From assembly GCF_947568905.1 (NCBI RefSeq), contig NC_079164.1, positions 92,008,001-92,072,000 of the forward strand: a stretch of DNA of 64,000 nucleotides. Reading direction: 5' to 3'. Position numbers and translations under genes: made by a program. The DNA is from Ostrea edulis. Its lineage: Eukaryota. The notes under the pieces were generated by a model. It did not search any database. It saw only the letters and a program-made list of their open reading frames with translations, and was not told the DNA's origin. Below, one piece after another: positions 35,901 to 52,136 of the stretch (the stretch's first letter is position 1; every line of letters begins with the position of its first letter).

Positions 35901-38900
35901 TCAAGTGTCAGTCATGTGTCCAGTTCAGACTTTCATAGGTAAGATCATTGGTGGTCTTATCTGTTTATTTTGTTACTACAGAATAGTGCCATAAGTTTAA
36001 GAGAAATGAAAATATCAAATGCCTTTTAATAATTTGTAGTTTTATGCTCTTTCAAACATGAATTTAGAGTTGTGTATGAGTTATATACATATGTTAGGAC
36101 TATCAACAGACGCCTATACAGGATTCATGAGCAGCAAATATTCTCACTATATTTGCTTTTTAAATAATCTTCTCGTTGTTTTCTTTAACATGCAAATGTT
36201 TTCAAGCAAGCAATTATGGGAAAGTTAATAACTTTAAAAATTATTTCAGCTGCATTAAAGTAATTCTGTACATTTTGAAAAAAAATTATAGATGAACATT
36301 GGCCCATAGAGCTGTAATTATCTTCCCTTGAAAAAAGATGCAACTATGCATTTAAACAAACTTGAATCCTCTATATCCAAAAATGCTTTGTAGCAAGTTT
36401 GGCTGAAATTAGCCCAGTGGTTCTTAAAAAGTCGGACATCTGACGAGCTTTCAGACAAGATAAATATATCACTAGATTAAATCTAAACTCGTTATGTGAA
36501 TTACATCAGTATACTTTTCATATTCAGTAAAAAAAGAAAATAGCATTTTACTTACAAAGAAATTGGTACAAAGCCATATTATTTTTGCTAATTGATTCAA
36601 AAACCGCATTTGTATCTAGCAAGTCTTACAGTACATGGTTGATTTCAGGTGAACACAACTCAATATTTAAAAAAAAGAGAGAAATACTACTACAGTTTGA
36701 GATTTTAATTTACTAAGTGCTTTTCATAATCTACCTGTGTTTGTGTGGTGACCTGCTGCGATGCTTCGACCTACTCCTGTGGCTCCTTTTGCGGTGCCTG
36801 TCTCGACTTCGACTCCTCCGCCTATCTCTTTTGTGTCTATGTCGATCTCTTGAGGAGTGCCTTCTCCGTTTTCTGTCCCGAGATCTGCTTCGTCTGCGTC
36901 TTCTATGTGATGAATGGTCTTTCCTTTCTCTACTCTGTAAAACATTTTTTGCTTTAGTTTCCCAATGACTCTAATGAGTAACATATGCAATTTTTTTTTC
37001 AATCCTAGAAGGAGTTAAATTTGACTGATTCTGATGACATCCAATCTTGATCTTATTTAGTGTACAGTTTCATCCATAACAGACTTTTGCGTCAAACATG
37101 AAATAATTTCTTATCCACCCTGAACGATCATGATATATCCATTTGTTTCCCAATTCAAACCACAGGCAATTGAATCGCCTGGGTTCAAATTCACTATTAA
37201 AGAATAAAGGTATAGACCTCTTAATATAGGGTATCCAAATTAGCCGACACAATTGCCTGTGATTCAAACAAAATACATTTGAGAGACACCATATCCTCTT
37301 ACACACCAGCATTAAATGGTAACGAATTTGACCTTAATGTCAACGACCTTTATTGGTCACATAACTTGGACATTCCTCTTTCCGTTCAGGATGTATGAGG
37401 TAAATATCTTGTTTAATTTAAAACATGATGCAGGATAAATATTTTAAACAGGTTAAGAGACAGAGAGATAAAAACAAAGCCCTTTGATCTCCAAATTTGT
37501 GGGATAAAAATACCACTTCATACTGGAAAAGCATTCGCATTGAACAAAAGAGACCTTAAAATTATCAAACATAAAACAGGAAACATGCACATTCAATCAA
37601 CATACCCTACGTTTTGATCTAGATCTTGAGCGACTAGAGCGAGACTTTCTCCTCGAGTCTGACCTATGCCTACGATGTGACCTTGACCTAGATCTGGACC
37701 GCTTCTTTCTGGATGGACTCCCTGTGGATCTCCTCTTGTCTTCGATTTCTTTTTTACTGGTTCCCTGGTCTGGTTCTTCCTCCTGATCTTCTTTGTCCTC
37801 CTCTCTGTTGGGGGATGGAGAAGCTGAGCCCGACCTGCTGCTGTGGGAGGATCTAGAGGAGTGGGAGGAATGAGAGGATGACCTCGCTCTGGGTGGCATA
37901 TCTAGTTCCTGTCAAGAACAAACAGAACTAAAAATTTCTAAAACATTGCTCCATATTACCTGAAAATATCATGCTATACATGTACATCTAAGAAAACTAT
38001 GTTAAGAACCCACTACATATACAGGTATCTGTAATTTGAGCCCAAAGAATATTAAACCTCTTGCAAAACAAACAGAAAAAATGATATTCTATCATTTATG
38101 AAATACTCAGGATAATGTATTCACAATGTACTAATACGTCACTTTGGTCAAATACCTAAGGGTAAGTTGATTAATCATAGATAAAAAGAAGTGATATTAC
38201 TATACAATATCAGAATTCAATTAAAACAAAATATCATTGTGATACAATATCATCCCTTCAACTCATTGGGGCTCCCCAATGTCTCAGAAATGTCAACAAC
38301 TATTATTTCTACCAGGTAAAAAAATTATAATGGGCTTCCCAATATCATTTTCATGTCCCATGTCCATCTTGAAACGAGAAGTACATAGTACTACATACAT
38401 GTCAAAAGTCCACAGAAAACGGAATAAAATCTGTCCCAGCTCAGGAAACTGTATAATCTCATCACAAATGATTGCGACATTGGTTACCTCCTCTTCGGTT
38501 TACTTACCCATACGCCACCAAACGACAACAAATCTCGAGATTTTTGTCGTCAATTTATGTTGAATCAGTGTTTCTTTGCAGCAATCACATGGTAAGGTAA
38601 ACCTAATTGATATGTAGATAGTTGGTCAGATTATTGAAGAAAATAACCTTTAACCTCTTTTCATATTTTCTAAAGTTAAGACAGGGGGGCTAGAAACACC
38701 CTATACCTAATTTCATTTCAAGGGATAATCTTACCGCACTGGTAAACCCTTTCAGACATGGAGAAATACATTCAATTTAATTTTACCCTAAGGATAAGAC
38801 AACCGCTAAGTAAGTCTTTCAGGAGTCCTACAAACAATATTTGAGAGTTGTGCACTCTGATTTTATCTTAGTTAGGCATGTTTTTTCTGGTCTGAAGGCA

Positions 38901-39961
38901 GCATTTAATAAAAACTTGTACGGGTTTAATGTGACATTAAAATAAATTTTTGGATGCTTTTCTTTCTTTTATATAAAATTTAGTCTGTTAATGAGGATTT
39001 TTTTGTGTTCTTTACCTTTTCAACAAACTCAGATCTAAACAGCTTCATGACATCATCAGCAAATGATCTTGATTTTTTGGGACTTTTGGCTGGAAAGAAA
39101 AAAAAAAAACCAAATTACTCAAAAATATGTTGTTTTAATCATAAATCGTGTAGAAATTAATTTACTTATGTTGCAATACATTTATCTATATACCAGGATG
39201 TATATAATATAAAAAAGTGTTTCATTTACCAACACAAAGTTACTCTCAGTGACTAACCTGATGCTCTTTTATCAAAACGAGTCTTCCATGAACATGACTG
39301 TATCAGAATAATTTAATATATGCTATCAAACAAGGAACATCATGTGAATAATGTTTTAAAGAGTTCTTCAAAACTCAATATCAAAGTATGTATATAATAA
39401 TTAAAGGTAAATAGGGCCATTTATACTTTATTTACATTATTGGTCTCTTACCTTCTTCCTCTGACGATCCTGGTGAATTCTTATCATCCTCTTTACTTTC
39501 CTCCTTTTCGTTTTCAACAATGTTTTGGAATAAACCTGGATACGCCACAATTCCTGCTTGAAGAAATTCCTGCACGGATTCAGGCTTCTCTGTGTCCCCA
39601 TTATCTCCAGAAATCATTTTCTCAAACGATTCCCACTCCGCCTGCAGACTAGAAGACACTTCTACCTGTCAAACACATAAAAAAAAAATCAAAAATAAAA
39701 CCCAGCAATTTATATATAGTCGTATGTAGAAAACGTACCATATTACGGTTTCAACGTTTCACTTCCGTTTTCGTTGTTAAAATGGCTGATGTCGCCATCT
39801 TGGTAAGGTGAACTGTTGCCATTATTTTTAAAAAGAGTATTCCCCAAAACACATGAGTATTTTGTTTAAAAATACGTTATAAATTATACCTGGTCTTGTC
39901 TGTTACTATTTGAGCTTTGTGATTTATCCCCATCATCATCATAACTCGCTAAAAGATCCAT
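32908..39961 (-). CDS. RSRC2: Arginine/serine-rich coiled-coil protein 2, about 517 aa, nine coding exons
   Basis: Exons 39961-39890, 39665-39452, 39089-39016, 37908-37606, 36934-36735, 35161-34998, 34158-34019, 33650-33525 and 33168-32908 join in frame. RS region, GVAVPKYYNPAAVNPLKYAEQ.QKRKLLW, KFRKLMGIK and THTQRGVGLGF are diagnostic. Confidence 0.92.
33693..33856. repeat. 46-bp minisatellite, 3.5 copies
   Basis: Unit CCAGTCTGGAACTGTGTGTACCTGACTCACTAGGATACACGATACT, about 40 nt from an RSRC2 acceptor. Confidence 0.95.
34713..34890 (-). mobile_element. Degenerate V-domain-like SINE fragment
   Basis: Reverse complement resembles 12105-12311 (GGGATCCGGGTTAGAGTAGGTCC...GAGGCAACTAAATGGGGTGG). 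Confidence 0.65.
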
Positions 39962-40030
39962 TTCGCAAGTGCGTATATCCGTACCAGAATATCCGCCCGC
40001 ACGGTTACGTTACTTCCGGTATCGATTAAG
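39755..40030. promoter_or_regulatory. Bidirectional housekeeping-type promoter region (RSRC2 / FAAP20-like)
   Basis: Locally CpG-rich; ETS-type ACTTCCG at 39761 and 40012; YY1-type AAAATGGC (+) and AAGATGGCG (-) at 39779-39801; divergent ATGs at 39961 (-) and 40276 (+). Confidence 0.65.
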
Positions 40031-40275
40031 TTTTTTACTCGTTCGATGAACATTTCGACTTCGTACTTGTATATATATACTGTACATAATGTTGTCGAGA
40101 AACACCCCTTTTCATATTAATATTGTAAAAAAAAAACCCAAAAAAACCCAAAAAACAAAGCAATCAATTAGCCTACATTTTGTACTTATCCTTAAATATT
40201 TTTTCCCCTTCGCAATAATTTGACAGTTTGATCCACTTGACTAGTTATAAAGTGAAAGCAGCATGAATATCATAA

Positions 40276-43200
40276 ATGAAGAGACTCAGTTTGAAACGAA
40301 AACTTGGTGTTATCGAGGAAAAGTCGTCAATTCAGTCTGTCCGAAAGACTTCCACAGAGACAGGAACTAGAGCCAGGTAGAATTAGAAGGCTAATTGTGA
40401 CATGTTAATTGTCTATTCATTAGACATGTTAGAGAAGGGGGGGGGGGTGTCACTATAGTATTTATTATTTATTTAAAATTATTTGAAACTAAATAAGGAT
40501 GCTTGATACACCACAGGTATCTGAATTTTGGTCAATAAATAGATACAAAAAGAAAAGAGAATAAAATACCCTATCTGTATTTATATAAGGGATAGATAGG
40601 GTATTTTCTCTCTCTCTCTCTTTTCTTTTTGTACCTATTTATTGATCAAAATTCAGATACCTGTGGATAAACCAACTGCTAACAGGAAATGGTTTCTATG
40701 TCATTCAAATATTAATGAGGTATCCATCCTGGATTTTAAGAAAAATTAGTTGTAAAATTATCCAACAAGGATTCAAACCCGGGCATTCTAAAAAGCTACT
40801 TGTGTATAAGATTATTCTCTGTCATTACTGTTTGTAATACCACTTGACTTCCAAAATGTACCCACTAGGCATTTAAAAAAACCAAACATTGTGCCTGTAA
40901 AACAGCTAGGGGAAATTAGGGGCAGATCAATCAAACCTTTGACAATTAACTCTTTTGTAACGTACAGCGGTCTGAACACGATTGCTGTTGCTTAACCAGA
41001 TATACATGTACTCTACCACATCACTAGAAAAGCTAGCTCACTAACCAGACAGTAGAAGTTCCCTTTAATAATATATTGTCCACTACACTTCATGTTTCCA
41101 CTTGAGTGCCTAGTATAATTAGGAGTCCATCAGAACAGAATATATTTATTCAAATTTAACTTTTGTACTGAAAAAAACATTTATTTCATTATACATTTGC
41201 ATTTCCAATGTTTTCGCCTTTCGTATCTTTATGAATTGTATAAATGGGCATAATCCCTCATGCTTATGAATGCAAAACTCCTTGATAAACATAGTACACC
41301 GAATTTAATGGCTGGGAATTCCCACTGAAATGAAAGTATACACATATACAAATGTAGAAGGTAAATACAAGAAATGAATTAATGACATATACTTATTACA
41401 TGTATCATCATATGTTTCATAATTAATTCATTTTGTGCTGATTTGAGAAACTCTTTCAAGGTATAGTGGGCCACCTTAAAATGCAAAATATTAACTAGCA
41501 TGTGATAAATAGAATTACCATAATGATTATGTAAAATCAGACCCCACATCAGATAAAGATTTCCCTTCAAACCTAATACTGTATGTATACAATATTTTAG
41601 TATATGGTGAATAGAATATCACTTGGTAAAATCCATATCATATGTCATATCAGCTCTTGGGCCCCATACCAGCTGTCATTTGATCTTGTGAGCTTGAATT
41701 TAATAACCTTTGTTCTACGAAGTCTTATCAAAAACTTAATTATTGGCCATGACTTTTGAAATGCAAGTGAAAGAGCATTTAAATTTGATGAATAGAAGTC
41801 TTGTTGAAAAAATATCTTGTGTAAGTGGTACCAAAATCAAAGTATGTCAATGTGACCTTGTAACTTTGTTGAGAATTAGATCCTCACTTGAAAACTGTGG
41901 AGGGAAAAACAGACAAATCATGTACTTTGTGTAATAATTCTTCAAAACTTCAAAACTGACCAAGTTCAATAGCCTGTAATTTTCTCAAAAATTGAAGAAA
42001 ATCAAAATCTTTGCCACATGCACCCCTACAATACCCATATAAACACTGTAAATCAAGAAGGTTCTCACCTGTTTAACAATTAAGATTGATGATTAATGAA
42101 TTTTCAGTCTTTACCTTTGAATTTTTTTTTCTGAACCAGGTTGCTTGTTATTATAATGATACATGTAGCTCTTGATCAAGCTTGTTTATTGCTGGGAACT
42201 GCTGCTCAGGTGAGCAATGTGGCCCATGGGCCTCTTGTTTATTTCTGATCATGAAAATTTTGCAAATTGAACATATGAAGTGGCCAGAATATCATTTTCT
42301 GAGTAAAGGTCATATCATATATTTTCAACATATACAAAACAGAATATTTGTTTCCAAATAGTGTTACCCCCCCCCCCCCCTTCCCCCCTTAATCAAATGG
42401 CAAGGTGTACCAAAAATAATAGATGATCTACAGTCAGTGTGGCTACTGCAGCATTAGATAGTGATGATTATAGCTCAATTAGGTTCACGTACATTAAGCA
42501 AGTATTTGATTATAAAGAAATGAATCTCATTTTTGAAAATACAAGGAAATAAGTATGCTGGTGTGAAGCATTGCAGTTCCATCATACCCTCCTGTATTTT
42601 CAACAATGAAGTTTATTTAATATTTTAAAGCTTACATTTACATTCTACTTTCATTTTTTTTTGGAATTTCCAGCCATTACAAGATTGCTAAACGTAGCCA
42701 TGTACTCACCGCCCCAAAAAATGTACAAAAGTCCCATAACTCCTGTAAAATTTGTTTAATTAAAATGATGGCGCAATATGATCAACTACATCTGTTGAGT
42801 GGTTTCTGAGGAATTACGTCCACAAAGTCAAGTGGGACGGACATCAGTATTTCTGTTGCGGTTGGGACAAAGACATTCTGTTATGGGTCAGAACAAACCC
42901 TTAATCTAGCACATGCAGCAGAATTTACTAACAAAAGGCAATTAAAGAATTGATAATATTCATTTACAATTAATAATTGAAAGAAAATGGTATTAATAGC
43001 AAAATACTAACTTATGGTAGTTGTCACTATTTTTGTGTGTGTAGATTCTGTTTGGATTTATTGTTCTAATTCCAAAATCCTTAGTTCCCAGTGTAAATAA
43101 AAAATCCTTAGTTCCCAGTGTAAATAAAAAATCCAAATGCATTGAAAGTGTCTAACCAAAGCCTTCTTTCTATCAAAAAAATTTCAGTGTATTCATTTTC

Positions 43201-46200
43201 TAGTACAATCTTGAAAGACAATGATGTAACCATTATGTCATCTTTCTACTAAAATAAGAACAATCTCGATCACAGGTGTCAATGAGGAAATAAACATGAG
43301 GCTCTGGAACAATCTAGTACAATTTAGTGCAGATAGTAATATACACAACAGCACTATATTTATTTGTATTCATATGTGCATTCATGCCTTTTAAAGGGAA
43401 ATAACTCAGATGCATCTCAAAACTTATGTATTGGATATGTTTATCTGTAACGTGTTGTCTCAAATACCAGCTATTGAGGTTCAGTAATGAAATTTGCAAC
43501 TTTTTTGCCATAAAGGGAAGATGGCAGTTGGCAGACCCAAAAATGGCCCAAACAGACCTACTTTTGTTAAAAATTTTAATCGAAGGGACACCAATTTCAG
43601 TCCCAATATTTCCCCCTTAGATTTGCCACTGGAGTATATGTTGGTATTAGGTTGACTTCTATTAATTTCGAGTCCAAAGGTTAAACTAAAAAGAAAATTT
43701 CTGGATCCAAGATAAATCCAATTCAGTACATGTATTTGCTTTAGCAATAAAATGTACCACAGTGTTATATGTTATTAAGATTTTTATTGAAATTTGAAGG
43801 TCATATTTCATAGTTCAAGGTCACTATAGCATTTTTGTTGAACACGCAGGTCTATTGTATAGAAAGTGCATTTGAACCAAAATAAGTGTAGTTCGACGAT
43901 TCCTCCTTGAATTTTTTCCCCGCCACACTCAACAATTTTTCAGTTATCTGGTGGCGCCCAGTTTTTATTGGTGGAAGAGAGAACCCAGATACAATGTACC
44001 TGGGAAGAGGCCACCGACCTTCCGAAAGTAAACTGGGAAACTTTCTCACTTACCAGCGCGAGCGGGATTCGAACCCGCGCTCCTCCTTGAAGTAATAATG
44101 CTGTATCTAATATTCTACCATTACAAAGTGCCTTGAAGCTGGGGCCACAAATTCACTAAATTTTTCTTATTTTGATGATTGTAAACTTTTTAAAGGCCAC
44201 TGGAAATCATTCATTCTGAAAAAATTGAACCACCACTACAGACGAGACAGACACCATTCCCGGCATATGTGTCCTCCCCAAAGGTATGTTTCTTTTAGAA
44301 AATACTGTAGATCTGGTAAGTTTGGTGCTGGAAATTTTTTGATTTTTTAACAGATGAATGAAATACACCAAAAATTAAAGCACCAAAATTTCTATTCATA
44401 TAAATGATACACTTGTAAATGAAATTGTACCAAAAGTAAACGCTAAGGTTTCACCTGAGTCATGCATAAACTTCCCACTTTTTCAACTTCTTCTCCAGAA
44501 CCATTGGTCCAATTTCAATCAAACTTGCCACAAAGCATCCATGGGTGAAGGAGATTCAAATTTGTTTAAACGAAGGGCAATACCCCCCCCCCCCTTCCAA
44601 AGGGAGATAATCAAAAAAAGGCAAAAATAGGAATTTGATCTTTTCGAGAATCACTGGGCCAGAAAAGTTGAAATTTACATGAAAGTGTCCTGATGTATAT
44701 GTACATGTAGTATGTAGTGTAAATTCAAGTTTCTTTAAACCATGGTCCCTGGGGGTAGGATGGTGCCACAATAGGGGATCAAAGTTTTACATGGGGCTAT
44801 ATAGGAATAATATTTAAAAATCTTCTCAATAACAACAACAGGGCCATGATGAGTCATATTGATATGCAAGCATCTCCAGGTATCACAGATTCAAGTTGAT
44901 TAAAGTTGTGGCCCCTGGGGATAGGGTGGGTCCAGAATAGGAAATCAAATTATTACATGTGAATACAGTGTATATTGAAAAAAATCTTCTTTATAACAGC
45001 AGCGCCTTGATTACTAATATTGATATGCAAGTATATCCTGTAGGTAATGCAGATTGAAGTTTGTTCAAATCATGACCAACGGGAGTTAAGAGTTGGCCTA
45101 AAATAGGGGTCCAAATTTTACATAAGAATGCACATACTAATTGCAAGAAACATCACAAAGTAAAATTAAACAGCAGGAAATGCATCAGTTGACATCAATG
45201 ATATACAGGCATCATTATATGATACAAACTCGCATTTGTTGACATAGGTATGTGATCAAACAAGGACATAGGACACATTTGACTTGCGATTTGCTTTTGT
45301 GATCGAGTTTGATGCTCGGGTTCGATATCACAAGTGTTGAATGTAGCAAAACGTGGTGTGTTTTGTGCATCAAGTTGTTTTAGTGCAGTTAGTTTTTCAT
45401 AGATTCACAGTCTTAAGTTTTAAGTCCTTATAGGTCTCCAACATGTTTTCCTTCGAAATTATACAAATGCCCCAATCTAATTAAAATCAGGCTTGTTGGA
45501 TCTGTGCCGTATACTCTACGCAGAGTATAAGGTGCGGATCTAAGAAGTCTGATTTTAATTAGATTGACAATTGCACCTAAGTTTATATGTTTTACTAAGA
45601 TTTTCTGCAAATTTGTGTCTTATTTTAACAATGAATAATGAAGAAACTTTGACCAGCTTACTTACTATATAATCATGCGGATCAGCACGATACTCAGGTG
45701 ACTGTTATTGTGTTAAGGCCCAAGGGCTTCTTGTTTAAGAAAATTCTGCTAAATATTCCTGAACAGATGCAAAAATTACACAATATACATTACCTCTTAT
45801 CTGAAAATCAATACCTTCATTGTATATATACAAGTTCAAATTGAAACAGGAGATTAATTTCCATGGAAATTTTCACAAAATCCATTCTTTTCAAGTCAAT
45901 GTCAAGTAGGTATGACCATGTGTGATTGCATGGTAGACAGGTATAGGAACCACTGCATGACATCTGTCTGGGTAGAGTCACACTTATAAATCTGGCATGA
46001 CATCTGTCTGTGGGTAGAGTCACACTTATAAATCTGGCATGACATCACATCTGTCTGGGTAGAGTCACTTATAAATCTGGCGTGACATCTGTCTGGATAG
46101 AGTCACTTATAAATCTGGCGTGACATCTGTCTGTGGGTAGAGTCACACTTATAAATCTGGTCGATACAGAACTGGTGTAATGTTTGTAGTTGCAGCGTGA

Positions 46201-47629
46201 CGATGTGGAGAGGTCAACAGACACTTCATCTTTTCCACCCATGTGCCAGTTGTGCAGGAAACGTAAACCACCTCCCAATGACTTCACACAAAATGTGAGT
46301 TACAAACTAAATGCTGTGAGAGAGATTCACTGCTAGTGCAGATGTCTTCCTATTTACTTACTTCTGAATTCAGTCTAAATTAAACAAGCTGTATATACCA
46401 TGTGCAGTATTGGTATTATAAACTAAGTGAGTGGATGGTTTCAGTATTACAAACTAAGTGAGTGGATGATTTCAGTATTATAAACCAAGTGAGTGGATGA
46501 TTTCAATATTATAAACCAAGTGAGTGGATGATTTCAGTATTATAAACCAAGTGAGTGGATGATTTCAATATTATAAACCAAGTGAGTGGATGATTTCAGT
46601 ATTATAAACTAAGTGAGTGGATGACTTCGGTATTATAAACCAAGTGAGTGGATGATTTCAATATTATAAACCAAGTGAGTGGATGATTTCAGTATTATAA
46701 ACTAAGTGAGTGGATTGATTTCAGTATTATAAACCAAGTGAGTGGATGATTTCAGTATTATAAACCAAGTGAGTGGATGATTTCAATATTATAAACCAAG
46801 TGAGTGGATGATTTCAGTATTATAAACTAAGTGAGTGGATGATTTCAGTATTATAAACTAAGTGAGTGGATGATTTCAATATTATAAACCAAGTGAGTGG
46901 ATGATTTCAGTATTATAAACTAAGTGAGTGGATGACTTCGGTATTACAAACTAAGTGAGTGGATGATTTCAGTATTACAAACTAAGTGAGTGGATGATTT
47001 CAGTATTATAAACTAAGTGAGTGGATGATTTCAGTATTATAAACTAAGTGAGTGGATGAAAATATTTATTTCTTGTTTTTAGTCATCTGCAGGTGTACAG
47101 GATAGAAATATTTGATAAGGATGACTACACATTTACACAATATATAGAAATAAAATTATAATTTTTAGTGCACAACACTGACTACAGATGAATTGCTTAA
47201 AACTTCAGTCCAGCAAGCAAAGAAAGGGAGGTCACCCTTACCAGAAATAAAACTCGAACCATCTCCCAGTAAAAGCACCATATCACAGTGCCCAATGTGC
47301 AACAAGGAATTTGATTCAAGGTATGGGGTAAAGTATAGCATGTCACTGCATTTAACAAAATGACATTAAAGCTGTATCATTTTAGTAAGAAAAAATATCA
47401 CATTTTGCAGGTTTTCATACTCAATATACTCATTAGTAGGTACATGTACAACTAAATAGATAGAATCATACTCACAGTATGGAACTCCTATCAGATTTTT
47501 ATATATACTAAATGGTACATTTGACATTTATTATTTTCTTTCATTGTTTGCAGTTTCACCATGCTTGGTGTGGACAGTCACTTAGCTAACTGCTTATCTT
47601 CTACAGATGACGATGATGTACACTGGTAG
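40276..47629 (+). CDS. FAAP20: FAAP20-like protein (Fanconi anemia core complex-associated protein 20) with C-terminal UBZ, about 171-173 aa
   Basis: Exons 40276-40376, 44196-44283, 46196 (or 46190)-46294, 47169-47320 and 47554-47629 are phase-compatible (2, 0, 0, 2). The C-terminus CPMCNKEFDSSFTMLGVDSHLANCLSSTDDDDVHW* matches the FAAP20 UBZ pattern CPMCQKEF....LDVDSHLAQCL....DVTW. The last two exons are secure; middle exons are less so. Confidence 0.75.
40512..40665. mobile_element. Foldback MITE with CA...TG ends
   Basis: About 65-bp imperfect arms CACAGGTATCTGAATTTTG...; flanks GATACAC / GATAAAC (6 of 7 match). Confidence 0.7.
43912..44080 (-). mobile_element. Deu/Nin-domain-like SINE (second copy)
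   Basis: Nearly identical to 28944-29125; 11-bp TSD TCCTCCTTGAA at 43901-43911 and 44081-44091. Confidence 0.85.
44451..45130 (+). mobile_element. Degenerate HINE with satellite-like internal repeats
   Basis: TCACCTGAG start, TTCAACTTCTTCTCCAGAACCA..GG.CCAATTTCAA box (reverse of 49140-49180) and ~165-bp internal repeats; boundaries approximate. Confidence 0.55.
45956..46160. repeat. 38-45-bp minisatellite, 5 copies
   Basis: Unit C(A/G)TGACATCTGTCTGGGTAGAGTCACACTTATAAATCTGG; ends 30 nt before the exon at 46190. Confidence 0.93.
46413..47059. repeat. 31-bp minisatellite, about 21 copies
   Basis: Unit AAAC(C/T)AAGTGAGTGGATGATTTCAGTATTAT. Confidence 0.97.
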
Positions 47630-48229
47630 CCAGTTCATAGTGGAGACTCTGTGAAATAACCCTATTGTGTTCATTTTTTTCTTTTTAAAAGTGAAAATAA
47701 TAAAAAAAAAATTAAAATAAAATAAAAAGAGAGGTCTACAGGTCACACCGCTCACCTGAGGAGCCGCAACTTCTCGTGTAAAACTCAAATATGACCCCGT
47801 CCTGACCCAAGGAAAACAAAATTTTGATCATTGCTTGCACATTGTGTCCTTAAAAATATTTTTAATGAGTTTTCCAACCATTTCCGATTTAAAACGTAAA
47901 CTGCAATTGTGGCCACATTGTAACCTTACAGGCCATTGTATCTAAATTACTATAAAGATGCTTGAATATCAAGGATTATAGGCAGAATGGTGGCATGAAA
48001 AAAATTGTCAATGAAACTTTCTCGTATTTGGTGAGATTTTAGTGCAGTGTATAGGGGATTCTCAATACAAATACATGTATATCCAAATCATGGGACTCTT
48101 GTCATTGTAAGTTGTGAGAATCAAGATACTTCCCCTGAACATTACGTTATGTACAATTACATTACATCATATGGTTCCATTTAATTTTCCCTGAAATTAA
48201 TTTCCATTTGTAATTCACAGACAATTGGG

Positions 48230-49127
48230 AACAATAGGCCCATGGGCCACATCGCTCACCTGAGTCACCTTGGCTCATAATTAAAGATATTTCCTATATA
48301 TTCACATGTAAAACTTTGATCCCTATTGTGGCCCCATCCAACCCCCGGGGGCCATGATTTCAACAAACTTGAATCTGCACTATGTCAGGAAGCTTTCATG
48401 TAAATCTCAGCTTTTCTGGCTCAGTGGTTCTGGAGAAGATTTTTCCTATATATTTGTATGTAAAACTTTGATCCCCTATTGTGGCCCCATCCTACTCCTG
48501 GGGGCCATGATTTTAACAAACTTGAATCTTCACTATGTCAGGAAGCTTTCATGTATATTTCCAATTTCCTGGCCCAGTAGTTTTTGAGAAGAAGATTTTT
48601 TAAAGATTTTCCTTATATATTTGTATGTAAAACTTTGATCCCCTATTGTGGCCCCATCCTATCCTTGGGGGCTATGATTTTAACAGATTTCAACCTGCAC
48701 TTTGTTAGAAAGCTTTTGTGTAAATTTCCACTTTCTTGGCCCTGTAGTTTTTGAGAAGGAGATTTTTAAATATTTTTCCTATATATTTGTATGTAAAACT
48801 TTGATCCTCCCTTGTAGTCCCATCCTGCCCCCGTGGGCCATGATTTGAACAAACATGAATCTGCACTATGTCAGGGAGCTTTCATGTAAATTTCCACTTT
48901 CCTGGCCCAGTAGTTTTTGAGAAGATTTTAAAATATTTTTCCTATATATTTGTATGTAAAACTTTGATCTCCTATTGTGGCCCCATCCAACCCCCGGGGG
49001 CCATGATTTAGTTCTTGAGAAGATTTTTAAATGACCCACCCTATTTTTGTGATTTATCTACCTTTTGAAAGGGACATAGCCTTTCATTTCAATGAACTTG
49101 AAAGCCCTTCACCCAAGGATGCTTTTG

Positions 49128-49170
<43 letters not shown>

Positions 49171-49245
49171 TTGAAAATGTAAAAAGTTTACAGACAACAG
49201 GCGATCAGAAAAGTTCACTTGAGCTTTCAGCTCAGGTGAACTAAT
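48230..49245 (-). mobile_element. Helentron non-autonomous element carrying ~166-bp HindIII-type satellite monomers (Cg170-like)
   Basis: Ends AACAATAGGCCCATGGGCCACATCGCTCACCTGAG and TTGAGCTTTCAGCTCAGGTGAACTAA; four to five tandem monomers containing GGAAGCTTTC and TTTGATCCCCTATTGTGGCCCC. Confidence 0.82.
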
Positions 49246-49402
49246 AAAAACCCTTTCAATACTTTTCAGATTTGGGGGGGGGGGGGGGGGGGGGGGGGGA
49301 GACAAAAATATAGTTGCAATTATTGACTTAATACTTCATGGCAATACTCAGCTAGGCGATGATTTTTTAAATGAATAGATAAATATTACTGGTTCATATA
49401 TA

Positions 49403-49859
49403 CAGTGCTCCCTCGATATATTGCCAACTTTTGTTCAAGACGAATTTGGGCAATGAAGCGGGGGTGGCATTATAATGAATTCACCATTATGGACAATTTA
49501 CTGAGCAGTCAAAAGAAAGTCAATACCGTAAAGCTATTTGGACTCTCTTTTGTATAAAAATTATCTCGAGTTTAACTCGGCAATTATTAGTAATTAACCT
49601 AGCCACCTGCATACCTTGTCCAAACTGTCCCAATATCAAAGTACAGGTGTGATTACGGATGGATGTCAGGTAGTTGGCATTACTATCAAGGATAAGCCCT
49701 ATAAAATTTGACCATTTTGTAAAAAGCAGTGGCAAATAGCGTTATGCGGGGGTGGCATTATAACGGGTGTTAACATGGGAGGAAATCTGTTCTTTAGAAT
49801 TTTCAGGCAATAAGCGGGGGCGACATTATAATGGGGGACAATATATTGAGGGAGCACTG
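49403..49859. mobile_element. Tc1/mariner (pogo-like) MITE
   Basis: TA TSD; TIR CAGTGCTCCCTC(G/A)ATATATTG. Confidence 0.85.
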
Positions 49860-50506
49860 TATTTATATTTTCACCCATGTTTTAAAAGGAAGCCATTATG
49901 ATGATGTAGAGTACTTCCTTGAGTGGAAAAACTAATTTGTAAAATTTAAATACACAAAAATTAATCTGTACAGTTGCAATTTGACCCAATCTTGTAAAAG
50001 GAAATGTACTTAAAAATTTCCAGATTTACGTTAACTAGTTATTTTCATATGCCAAGAAAGCATTGACCAATAAGACTGAATCTGATGATGCAGATATAAG
50101 AAACAATACAATAATATGCATACTGTATTTCATTTTATTTTACAAATGATCTGTCAAAATGACAGCAACATAAACTGCATGTAGTTCTGTAAAACATGAT
50201 GAGAAGATAACATTTCTGGTTATGTTTCTTTTGAAAGGACATGTCTGGCTGACGAATTCGACAGATAGTGGAAATAAGTCCTCATGAAATATAAGTGATT
50301 TACTAACTATCTGAATAAGAAATACCCCATTGTTAATTGTGAGATTCAGATTTGCTTAATATGTAATACACAGCAGTACAGTAGCATGTCCATGATTATT
50401 CTGTCACCACTGTAGAAAGAGATGAAATTAAACATTGGAAATCTGATTGTATCACACAATATCAATACACAGGAATGCGTTAAAAGAGCTAAACTGTGAG
50501 TGGAAG

Positions 50507-52136
50507 TTATGAGCATTTCCAGGCCGATTTATTAAGTCTGTCCAGTTCCTTCACTTTTTTGTACCTCCATATATACCACAGAAAGCCCACAGCAATAAGA
50601 AGCAGGGATTCTATATAGTAGCCATCTAGTGTGGTCTTGCATGCACCTCCATGTTGGGTACATTGCTGGAAAAAAAAATTCACAGATACAGTAATAAGCA
50701 ACTAAAATGCACACACCTTAGGCATTAGAAGAATTGTTAACATTGCATTACCCGAGTTATCATTCTAAAGCTCATCAAAATACAGCTATAGACTGCAAAA
50801 TCATGAAATCTCTAAATACAGCTAGGGACTACAAAATCATGAAATCTCTAAATACAGCTAGAGATTGCAAAATCATGAAATCTCTGCAACACGGTATACA
50901 GTGAAACCTGTCTAACTCAACCTGCACTGGGGTCAAATTTTGGTCAGATTTATAGACAGGATGGTGGATTGCAGTGTCAAGTAGAAATGGGAATGAAAAT
51001 TTGGGTCAATGTTCATTTTTTACATTTCCTACCACAGAGCCACTTCATCCAACAATCCTCCTTTCAATGGTGGATAATTAGAAAATGGTGAAGTTTCTAA
51101 CTATCTTCTCAAAATTACTTGGTCAGAGTTGGCAAAATTTTTGTGATGGTCTCCTTATATAGTGTAGATAAAATATTGTTCAACTCCAGCCTCCAGTGCC
51201 AGGATGGGGCCACCAAAGGGATCCATGTTTAGATGTGGCAAAGTTGACCCCAACTTTGATGAATGACCTTGACCTCTATCTAGTTTTGACCTTAACCATT
51301 CAATTCATTGAAGTCTTTACCTTGTATAATTAAAATTTTATGACCAAGTTAAAGTTACAGACAACCGAAAAAATTAACAAACCAAAAACATGTCCCCAGA
51401 TGTTCAATCTCCATCACATAAAAATGTTTTAAAAGCTTCTGAAGAACAGCCATTAAAGCTACCACTGTAGTGAACAGTACAAAAGGGAACTGTACTGTCT
51501 CACTAGAGAGCTAGCTTTTCTAGTGATGTGATAGAGTCTCTCTCTTGATCTCACAAGTTAAGCAATGGCGAGCGTGATCAGCACTTGGCTGGGTGACCGC
51601 TACACGTTATACTGCATGTATTATTAGTGTACACAATATGCAAATGACATGTAGAGTATATATGCAATATTCATAGATGTTTCATATTTGTATAAAGTAA
51701 TCCTTTAGATGGGATCCAGACATGCTGCATTTTAACCCCACTATCTACTTCTCTATCTTTAATGTTACATGTATCCTATCTATAATAAATAGATGATGAC
51801 AGCTTACTTCATCTACAGGAGCTGAATTTTCACAACTACCATTTGCTCCAATACACTCTTTCCATGTCAAACCATCCACTAACCACAATGCCAGTGTGCT
51901 AGGCCAGTTACCACCTGAAATACACATAGTTTACAGACAATTCAATCAAGTCTTGAGAAATAAATCTTTCATCCTCTTGCAGTACTTTTGATAATAATTC
52001 TTTCATTTTAAAGGGCATAGACACAATTTTTATGCCCCCCCCCCCGATCGAAGATTGGGGGGCATATTGTTTTTGTCTTGTCTGTCATCCTGTCTGAAGC
52101 TTTAACCTTGCTAATAACTTTTGAACAGTAAGTACC

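What the first reader, a model, noticed from the sequence alone, without database searches (positions are those of the whole stretch)
40276..47629. Hidden FAAP20-like UBZ gene absent from the ORF track
Five short exons join into ~172 aa ending in CPMC-x(14)-H-x3-C plus a terminal Trp. This is the FAAP20-type UBZ, in which the C-terminal Trp contributes to ubiquitin binding. The N-terminus has a basic KRLSLKRK motif. FAAP20 is mostly studied in vertebrates as the FANCA partner, so a mollusc copy bears on the age of the FA core complex. I could not find a clear FANCA-binding WxxLL segment, so either an exon is missing from my model or that module has diverged.
Basis: partly seen in the sequence, partly recalled or inferred. 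Interest (0 to 1): 0.7.

Follow-up and report, generated by a model that had tools for sequence, protein, structure and literature searches.

The report
Oyster FAAP20-like ubiquitin-binding zinc-finger gene
The five short exons are a real flat-oyster gene, already in RefSeq as an unnamed protein, whose end is a textbook FAAP20-type ubiquitin-binding zinc finger but which lacks the known FANCA-binding helix.

Summary
Five + strand exons (40276-40376, 44196-44283, 46190-46294, 47169-47320, 47554-47629) have GT..AG borders and consistent phases, and give 173 codons plus a stop.

A database search with exon 4 alone returned this exact 173-aa protein: XP_048767377.1, "uncharacterized protein LOC125674292 [Ostrea edulis]". 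The gene is therefore hidden only from an ORF track, not from public annotation.

- **Zinc finger.** Pfam UBZ_FAAP20 scores 46 bits (cut-off 25). No other UBZ family hits. Exon 5 alone matches only human FAAP20 among all PDB chains.
- **Ubiquitin contacts.** Every residue shown to contact ubiquitin in human FAAP20 is present, including the last-residue Trp.
- **Relatives.** Orthologues exist in Saccostrea (named "FAAP20-like" by NCBI) and Crassostrea. Intron-free contigs from six sequencing runs of related oysters confirm the splice across the zinc finger. A profile of the oyster proteins finds only vertebrate FAAP20 as its next hits.
- **Other shared motifs.** Oysters and vertebrates share an N-terminal K/R-L-S-L-K-R-K motif and a PFPxY motif.
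- **Partner gene.** FANCA is present in the same genome.
- **What is missing.** The FANCA-binding W-x3-L-R helix (Pfam FANCA_interact) is absent in all oysters, and no exon is missing. An oyster-only invariant FPPMCxxCRKRKP block is unexplained.

Verdict: a probable FAAP20 orthologue of divergent form. Interest is modest.

The parts
40276..40376 (+). Exon 1 (coding part): Met1 to Ala33 plus 2 nt of codon 34. Donor GT at 40377.
   Evidence: Residues 1-35 of P0001 map here. Oyster transcripts L015 and L018 align from exactly 40276.
40279..40305 (+). N-terminal basic motif KRLSLKRKL (residues 2-10). It is invariant in six oysters and matches the K-L-S-L-K-R-K motif at residues 8-14 of vertebrate FAAP20.
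   Evidence: The statistics are weak (hhalign E 0.025; shuffle test mixed).
44196..44283 (+). Exon 2: residues 34-63, entered in phase 2. Acceptor AG at 44194-95, donor GT at 44284.
   Evidence: Saccostrea P0005 residues 45-75 map here.
44254..44268 (+). PFPAY motif (residues 54-58). F55 and P56 are invariant in oysters. It is colinear with PFPLY inside the vertebrate FANCA_interact domain.
   Evidence: a short match, not significant on its own.
46190..46294 (+). Exon 3: residues 64-98, phase 0 at both ends. There is an in-frame alternative acceptor 6 nt downstream (46196).
   Evidence: Transcript similarity ends exactly at 46294.
46232..46270 (+). Oyster-invariant block FPPMCxxCRKRKP (residues 78-90), with only two conserved Cys. 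Function unknown.
   Evidence: Short helix 83-86 with pLDDT about 76 in the model. No counterpart found in vertebrate FAAP20.
47169..47320 (+). Exon 4: residues 99-148 plus 2 nt of codon 149. It carries the first half of the zinc finger (Cys139, Cys142).
   Evidence: It was the query that retrieved P0001 at 100% identity over residues 99-148.
47283..47320 (+). UBZ (FAAP20 / UBZ2 type), first part: residues 137-148 with the CPMC knuckle.
   Evidence: Pfam profile positions 2-12. Residues 137-169 of P0001 cover profile 2-34 at 46 bits.
47554..47629 (+). Exon 5: last base of codon 149, residues 150-173 and TAG. [quoted passage not shown]
   Evidence: 24.8 bits; the only PDB matches are 3wwq and 2muq/2mur, human FAAP20 UBZ, aligned flush to the terminal Trp. 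Helix 152-165 in the model.
47699..47726 (+). Poly(A) signals AATAAA (47699, 47721) and ATTAAA (47711), 70-95 nt after the stop.
   Evidence: pattern only; inferred.
39790..40275 (.). Probable shared promoter with a head-to-head neighbour on the - strand. ACTTCCGG (ETS-like) lies at 40012-40019.
   Evidence: The same motif sits at the 5' end of the related oyster transcript L015. Inferred, not tested.

Best explanation
This is the single-copy Ostrea edulis gene LOC125674292. It has five exons over 7.35 kb and encodes 173 aa. The product is a small, mostly disordered adaptor protein.

Its last 37 residues are a FAAP20-type (UniProt 'UBZ2-type') ubiquitin-binding zinc finger.

- Cys139, Cys142, His158 and Cys162 would hold one zinc ion.
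- The helix residues Asp156, Ala160 and Leu163 (the D-A-L motif), together with the tail residues Asp170 and the C-terminal Trp173, would close around the Ile44 patch of ubiquitin, as shown for human FAAP20.

It is most likely the oyster orthologue of FAAP20, the ubiquitin reader of the FANCA-FANCG-FAAP20 module. That module brings the Fanconi anaemia core complex, and through it REV1-dependent translesion synthesis, to ubiquitylated chromatin at DNA interstrand crosslinks.

- Shown here: the gene model, the domain identity, the conservation of the contact residues, the orthologues, and the presence of FANCA.
- Inferred: zinc and ubiquitin binding, and a role in crosslink repair.
- Open: how, or whether, it binds FANCA. 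The vertebrate W-x3-L-R helix is absent.
For: - **Gene model.** Exon-by-exon translation and phases are consistent. A search with exon 4 returned a 173-aa protein identical to the model, XP_048767377.1. That protein maps back only to these five exons in the whole 895-Mb genome.
- **Domain.** UBZ_FAAP20 scores 46 bits, E 4e-12, with no other UBZ family. Exon 5 hits only human FAAP20 UBZ in the PDB.
- **Contact residues.** The residues named as zinc ligands and ubiquitin contacts in PMC4267625 and PMC4370504 are C147, P148, M149, C150, L161, D164, S165, H166, L167, A168, C170, L171, D177 and W180. All have identical counterparts here: C139, P140, M141, C142, L153, D156, S157, H158, L159, A160, C162, L163, D170 and W173.
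- **Orthologues.** There are six oyster orthologues, two of them named FAAP20-like by NCBI.
- **Transcripts.** Intron-free contigs of 900-980 nt from six runs carry the whole CDS across the UBZ junction.
- **Outgroup hits.** The oyster profile's next hits are vertebrate FAAP20 only. hhalign on the UBZ gives E 3e-14.
- **Shared motifs.** The N-terminal K/R-LSLKRK motif and PFPxY are shared in the same order.
- **Pathway genes.** FANCA N-domain exons and FANCL are in the same genome.
Against: - Pfam FANCA_interact (PF15751) is not detected in any oyster protein or anywhere in the genome.
- The W40/L44/R45 helix needed for FANCA binding in human FAAP20 (PMC6400411) has no counterpart. The oyster proteins have no Trp before the C-terminal one.
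- Outside the UBZ, similarity to vertebrate FAAP20 rests on two short motifs whose statistics are weak (hhalign E 0.025, probability 2%; shuffle test mixed).
- No O. edulis RNA-seq could be consulted.
- No binding was measured.
Confidence: 0.75

Rival explanations
1. It is a FAAP20-related ubiquitin reader that is not a Fanconi core subunit. It keeps the UBZ and the N-terminal basic motif but does not bind FANCA. It would work alone or with another partner, for instance through the oyster-only FPPMCxxCRKRKP block.
For: - FANCA_interact and the W-x3-L-R helix are absent in all six oysters.
- No exon is missing.
- An invariant oyster-specific block has no vertebrate counterpart.
- In human FAAP20, residues 1-30, where the shared basic motif lies, were mapped to PP2A-B56alpha binding and not to FANCA (PMC6400411).
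Against: - Short binding motifs in disordered regions diverge quickly, so absence by sequence is weak evidence.
- FANCA and FANCL are present in the genome.
- The PFPxY motif lies inside the vertebrate FANCA_interact domain and is kept.
- The gene is single copy, so no other FAAP20 candidate exists.
Confidence: 0.2
2. It belongs to another UBZ family (RAD18/WRNIP1/SPRTN UBZ4 type, or Pol eta UBZ3 type) and only resembles FAAP20 by the CCHC pattern.
For: UBZ fingers are short and share the C-x2-C...H-x3-C skeleton. A second, weaker UBZ in the genome (contig 9) also touches the UBZ_FAAP20 model at 19.6-22.7 bits.
Against: - No other UBZ model hits at E up to 10.
- The score is 21 bits above the curated cut-off.
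- The FAAP20-specific tail (Asp at W-3, and Trp as the last residue) is present and invariant in oysters.
- All profile hits outside oysters are FAAP20.
Confidence: 0.03
3. It is a chance alignment of short open frames, or a dead gene.
For: Each exon is short (25-50 codons), and no O. edulis transcript could be read here.
Against:
- All five exons are conserved in other oysters, while introns and UTRs are not.
- The frame is intact.
- Pfam gives E 4e-12.
Confidence: 0.02

Closest known systems
Vertebrate FAAP20 (C1orf86), the FANCA-FANCG-FAAP20 module of the Fanconi anaemia core complex. UBZ structures: 2MUQ, 2MUR, 3WWQ.
   Same: - It is a small, mostly disordered protein with the zinc finger at the very C-terminus.
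- It has the same C-x2-C-x15-H-x3-C spacing, the CPMC knuckle, the D-A-L helix motif, an Asp at W-3, and Trp as the last residue.
- It has an N-terminal K/R-L-S-L-K-R-K motif and a PFPxY motif in the same order.
- FANCA is present in the genome.
   Different: - It has no W-x3-L-R FANCA-binding helix and no Pfam FANCA_interact hit.
- The tail is one residue longer.
- It has an extra invariant FPPMCxxCRKRKP block.
- I saw no match to the human pSer48-Pro49 (PIN1) or pSer113-Pro114 (FBW7 degron) sites, but I did not test for them.
Oyster orthologues: Saccostrea echinata and S. cucullata 'Fanconi anemia core complex-associated protein 20-like' (XP_062590424.1 and P0005), and Crassostrea virginica LOC111135150.
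   Same: They share the architecture and all four conserved blocks, at 47-53% identity. The intron inside the UBZ is at the same place: one Saccostrea model, P0004, reads through it.
   Different: The O. edulis protein is the shortest (173 aa against 190-226), through deletions in the unconserved linkers. It is left unnamed in RefSeq.
Pol eta UBZ3 and the RAD18, WRNIP1 and SPRTN UBZ4 fingers.
   Same: They are zinc-held helices that bind the Ile44 patch of ubiquitin. Pol eta shares the D/A/L contact pattern (PMC4370504).
   Different: They belong to different Pfam families, none of which hit here. None has the C-terminal Trp tail. All sit in large enzymes rather than at the end of a 20-kDa adaptor.

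Membership tests
UBZ_FAAP20 domain (PF15750, UBZ2-type zinc finger) | Profile match above Pfam's curated cut-off (25 bits) | tested here: met
   46 bits, E 4.3e-12, residues 137-169 covering profile 2-34. The exon halves score 16 and 24.8 bits colinearly.
UBZ_FAAP20 domain (PF15750, UBZ2-type zinc finger) | CCHC zinc ligands with FAAP20 spacing (human C147, C150, H166, C170) | tested here: met
   C139, C142, H158 and C162 in the spacing C-x2-C-x15-H-x3-C. Ligands as given in PMC4370504.
UBZ_FAAP20 domain (PF15750, UBZ2-type zinc finger) | D(-4)-A(0)-L(+3) ubiquitin-contact motif on the helix | tested here: met
   D156, A160 and L163 are invariant in six oysters. Motif as defined in PMC4267625.
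UBZ_FAAP20 domain (PF15750, UBZ2-type zinc finger) | C-terminal tail with an invariant Asp and a Trp as the very last residue | tested here: met
   D170 and W173 followed by the stop. The alignment to 3wwq and 2muq ends flush at Trp, with one extra residue in the tail.
UBZ_FAAP20 domain (PF15750, UBZ2-type zinc finger) | Binds zinc and ubiquitin | not testable with these tools
   This needs a binding assay. See Tried and rejected for the one computational attempt, which gave no verdict.
FAAP20 protein (Fanconi core complex subunit) | N-terminal FANCA-interaction domain (PF15751) with the W40/L44/R45 helix | tested here: not met
   There is no PF15751 hit at E up to 10 in P0001, in five other oyster proteins, or in the six-frame genome. 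There is no Trp before W173. Vertebrate controls hit at 29-37 bits.
FAAP20 protein (Fanconi core complex subunit) | Overall architecture: about 20 kDa, disordered, UBZ at the extreme C-terminus | tested here: met
   173 aa. The AlphaFold2 model has mean pLDDT 57, and its only firm helix is 152-165.
FAAP20 protein (Fanconi core complex subunit) | Homology to vertebrate FAAP20 outside the UBZ | tested here: inconclusive
   RLSLKRK matches KLSLKRK at 6/7 residues, and PFPAY matches PFPLY in the same order. However, hhalign gives E 0.025 at probability 2%, and the shuffle test was mixed, from 1/500 to 475/500.
FAAP20 protein (Fanconi core complex subunit) | Best reciprocal relatives are FAAP20 | tested here: met
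   The oyster profile's hits beyond oysters are named FAAP20 or carry PF15751+PF15750, apart from one eel protein with the UBZ alone and two short oyster fragments. The search covered a limited length range (95-303 aa).
FAAP20 protein (Fanconi core complex subunit) | Partner FANCA encoded in the same genome | tested here: met
   Four colinear exons of Fanconi_A_N lie at C1:61601505-61603047, scoring 41.8, 34, 31.9 and 22.3 bits. FANCL is also present.
FAAP20 protein (Fanconi core complex subunit) | Physical association with FANCA and stabilisation of it | not testable with these tools
   Oyster FANCA is not available as one referenced protein, and it exceeds the size limit of the complex tool.
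Other UBZ families (RAD18/WRNIP1/SPRTN UBZ4, Pol eta UBZ3) | Profile match to their zinc-finger models | tested here: not met
   None is listed at E up to 10 for P0001 or any oyster orthologue.

The most novel reading that the evidence does not exclude
FAAP20 is older than vertebrates, dating at least to the protostome-deuterostome ancestor. In this reading its ancestral form was a basic N-terminal motif, PFP motifs and the Trp-tailed UBZ. The W-x3-L-R helix that clamps it to FANCA would then be a later, deuterostome or vertebrate addition. Oyster FAAP20 would either dock on FANCA through another element (the invariant FPPMCxxCRKRKP block, whose two Cys could share a zinc with a partner or a second copy) or work as a free ubiquitin reader outside the core complex.
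Probability: 0.3. Interest if true: 0.5.

Novelty: new variant of a known kind. Interest (0 to 1): 0.3.

Why it matters
FAAP20 has been studied almost only in vertebrates. None of the searchable papers mentions it together with oysters.

A clear mollusc copy shows that the Trp-tailed UBZ and the N-terminal basic motif are old. It also gives a natural variant that lacks the FANCA-clamping helix. That makes one question testable: is the FANCA-FANCG-FAAP20 module as ancient as FANCC-E-F and FANCL, or was the ubiquitin reader recruited to FANCA later?

In practical terms, O. edulis LOC125674292 can be named FAAP20-like. Beyond that the finding is ordinary. The domain is a known family, the gene model is already public, and NCBI already labels the Saccostrea orthologues.

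Tried and rejected
**Joining the exons.** All searches on window sequence were exon by exon, by reference. The joined protein was used only as the database entry P0001, which the exon-4 search returned.

**Searches that gave nothing usable**
- The word search with exon 4 was blank. This was expected, because the length window of 35-112 aa excludes the 173-aa protein.
- The exact look-up of P0001 in assemblies found nothing on record.
- FANCA_interact found nothing in the genome.
- FANCA_CTD, Fanconi_C and FAAP100 found nothing exon by exon. The tool says this does not show absence.
- FANCF was marginal at 24.2 bits.
- Rfam over 36000-52000 found nothing, and there is no tRNA at 43700-44300.

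**Hunt for a missed W..LL exon in the introns.** There were five candidates, including MRLWNNLVQF at 43296 and an alternative frame of exon 2. I rejected them all. None can be spliced in phase to reach the UBZ frame, and none is matched by the orthologous proteins.

**HMMs of the N-terminal halves against shuffled sequences.** The result was inconclusive.

**Co-fold with ubiquitin.** I co-folded residues 130-173 with oyster ubiquitin, taken by reference from the polyubiquitin gene. The tool returned no verdict (score 0.03, mark 0.34). This counts neither for nor against binding.

- The primate hit P0011 (Papio) was left unused as possibly human-like.
- Intron positions were not compared with vertebrate genes, because no vertebrate genomes are available here.
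- No fold search was run, because the model is mostly low confidence.
- Five papers were not held.
Full report
**1. The observation.**

Reading 40000-48000 and translating each proposed exon by reference confirms five + strand exons:

| Exon | Coordinates | Length (nt) |
|---|---|---|
| 1 | 40276-40376 | 101 |
| 2 | 44196-44283 | 88 |
| 3 | 46190-46294 | 105 |
| 4 | 47169-47320 | 152 |
| 5 | 47554-47629 | 76, including TAG |

- All four introns are GT..AG, with pyrimidine-rich acceptors.
- The entry phases are 0, 2, 0, 0 and 2, and the lengths sum to 522 nt, or 173 codons plus a stop.
- The two split codons read Arg34 and Ser149.
The finger is C-x2-C-x15-H-x3-C, and the protein has 173 residues.
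- Each exon's open frame is at most 56 aa, and there is no ORF of 90 aa or more between 38563 and 54377. This explains why an ORF track misses the gene.
- No N stretch lies in the region.

**2. The domain, exon by exon.**

- Against Pfam, the end of exon 4 matches UBZ_FAAP20 positions 2-12 (16 bits), and exon 5 matches positions 15-34 (24.8 bits).
- The two residues between them are Ser148 and the split Ser149, so the halves abut without an indel.
- No other UBZ model appears.
- Against all PDB chains, exon 5 alone matches only the human FAAP20 UBZ entries 3wwq and 2muq/2mur (E 0.006). The alignment runs flush to the terminal Trp of both proteins.
- Exon 4 alone gives only noise in the PDB.

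**3. The gene is already in public annotation.**

- The word search with exon 4 was blank, because its length window cannot reach a 173-aa protein.
- The exhaustive search with exon 4 returned P0001: 173 aa, 100% identical over residues 99-148. Its sequence equals my exon-by-exon reading.
- P0001 is XP_048767377.1, 'uncharacterized protein LOC125674292 [Ostrea edulis]'. The window is therefore flat-oyster chromosome sequence (G000 contig 1, 92.05 Mb).
- P0001 maps back to the genome only as these five exons, so the gene is single copy.
- As one protein, P0001 scores 46 bits (E 4e-12) on UBZ_FAAP20, residues 137-169. There is no FANCA_interact hit and no other UBZ family.

**4. Relatives and splicing evidence.**

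- P0001 finds orthologues in Saccostrea echinata (190 aa, named FAAP20-like), S. cucullata (a partial model named FAAP20-like, plus a model that reads through the intron inside the UBZ) and Crassostrea virginica. It also finds three proteins from Logan assemblies.
- The Logan proteins sit on contigs of 903-982 nt from six different runs. Each carries an uninterrupted CDS of 224-226 codons, short UTRs and an AATAAA near the end. They are transcript-like, whereas the O. edulis gene is spread over 7.35 kb.
- Across the UBZ junction the transcript reads ...CCC AG|T TTT ACC ATG CTT. O. edulis gives ...TCA AG|T TTC ACC ATG CTT when 47320 is joined to 47554.
- DNA similarity between those transcripts and the window is confined to exons. 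It starts at the ATG (40276), ends at the donor of exon 3 (46294), and resumes at the acceptor of exon 5.
- The orthologous proteins map to the five exons and to nothing else in the introns.
- O. edulis RNA-seq itself could not be consulted.

**5. Is it FAAP20?**

Evidence for:

- The structural papers name these human residues. Zinc ligands: C147, C150, H166, C170. Fingertip: P148, M149. Helix contacts: L161, D164, S165, L167, A168, L171. Invariant tail residues: D177 and the C-terminal W180. Mutants D164A, A168Y and W180A abolish ubiquitin binding.
- All of these have identical counterparts here: C139, C142, H158, C162, P140, M141, L153, D156, S157, L159, A160, L163, D170 and W173. The tail is one residue longer. 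All are invariant in six oysters.
- A profile of the oyster proteins finds, beyond oysters, only vertebrate FAAP20: Pogona, Anolis, Sphenodon, Rhineura, an eel and a baboon. I did not use the baboon entry. Profile-profile alignment of the UBZ gives E 3e-14.
- Outside the finger, vertebrate FAAP20 starts with an invariant K-L-x-L-K-R motif (mostly GKLSLKRK) at residues 8-14. The oysters start MKRLSLKRKL.
- A PFPxY/F motif follows in the same order in both groups.

Limits of that last point:

- The two matches outside the finger are short and weak: hhalign E 0.025 at probability 2%, and a mixed shuffle test.
- I count them as suggestive only.

**6. What is missing.**

- In human FAAP20, FANCA binding needs residues 31-48 with W40, L44 and R45. 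Residues 1-30 were mapped to PP2A-B56alpha (PMC6400411).
- Vertebrate controls hit Pfam FANCA_interact from that helix to the PFP motif at 29-37 bits.
- No oyster protein hits it. The genome has no six-frame match, and the oyster proteins have no Trp before the last residue.
- Candidate W..LL segments in the introns cannot be spliced in phase and are not matched by orthologues.
- The module is therefore absent or unrecognisably diverged in the whole oyster group. It is not lost to a modelling error.
- In its place the most conserved oyster element is FPPMCxxCRKRKP (residues 78-90), with only two conserved Cys. The AlphaFold2 model gives it a short helix at moderate confidence. The rest is disordered apart from the UBZ helix 152-165.

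**7. Context.**

- FANCA is present as four colinear Fanconi_A_N exons at C1:61.60 Mb.
- FANCL is present at 107.6 bits.
- FANCF is marginal.
- Several other core families were not seen exon by exon, which does not show absence.
- The gene lies head to head, about 500 bp apart, with a - strand gene. Poly(A) signals follow the stop by 70-95 nt.

**8. Mechanism.**

- Shown: a conserved, spliced, single-copy gene for a disordered protein that ends in a FAAP20-type UBZ with every known ubiquitin-contact residue.
- Inferred from the human structures: one zinc ion held by C139, C142, H158 and C162. The helix and the folding-on-binding tail clamp the Ile44 patch of ubiquitin, with W173 indispensable.
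- Inferred from orthology and the presence of FANCA: it acts as the ubiquitin reader of a FANCA-containing module in crosslink repair and REV1-linked bypass.
- Open: the FANCA contact.
- A co-fold with oyster ubiquitin gave no verdict and is not evidence either way.

**9. Novelty and verdict.**

'Hidden' applies only to the ORF track, because the model is in RefSeq and NCBI already labels the Saccostrea orthologues FAAP20-like.
- No searchable paper links FAAP20 to oysters. Papers on the evolution of the pathway deal with other subunits (PMC10085685).
- One defining module of FAAP20, the FANCA-interaction helix, was tested and not found. I therefore file the protein as a member of the UBZ_FAAP20 domain family and a probable, divergent FAAP20 orthologue: a new variant of a known kind, of modest interest.
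- The two earlier notes of this scan on the same window concern other loci and did not bear on this.

Noticed in passing
window 46413-47059 and 45955-46160: There is a tandem array of a 31-bp unit, 20.8 copies at 94% match, inside intron 3. A 42-bp unit array of 5 copies ends 30 nt before exon 3.
   Followed up: no
window 40511-40560 / 40617-40666: An inverted repeat with 50-nt arms, 96% complementary and 56 nt apart, lies in intron 1. It is a hairpin shaped like a miniature transposable element.
   Followed up: no
window 39450-39665 (- strand) and 39790-40275: A head-to-head neighbour gene has an acidic 72-aa exon with no Pfam hit and a probable first exon ending ATG|GT near 39730. The intergenic stretch of about 500 bp holds ACTTCCGG at 40012-40019. 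The same motif lies at the 5' end of the related oyster transcript L015.
   Followed up: partly
G000:C9:19464150-19464233 (-), locus L001:1501-1992: A 164-aa open frame ends in a second, weaker UBZ: C-x2-C-x14-H-x3-C, ending SCLIE, with no terminal Trp. It scores 19.6 bits, below the cut-off. It is preceded by QTNLAAMF, which looks like a PCNA-interacting box. It is a different gene, perhaps SPRTN-like.
   Followed up: partly
window 40263-40370: An upstream ATG, 13 nt before the start codon and in another frame, opens a 35-codon ORF that overlaps exon 1 and stops before the donor. It is either a small upstream ORF, or the transcript starts downstream of it.
   Followed up: no
G000:C5:25289371-25290954 (-), locus L026: A polyubiquitin gene has seven head-to-tail 76-aa units in one open frame.
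   Followed up: partly
P0004 (Saccostrea cucullata XP_062587699.1): This public model reads through the intron that splits the UBZ and so loses the second half of the finger (FDP then RYVSLK...). A separate partial model, P0003, holds the correct end. It is probably an annotation error in that genome.
   Followed up: partly
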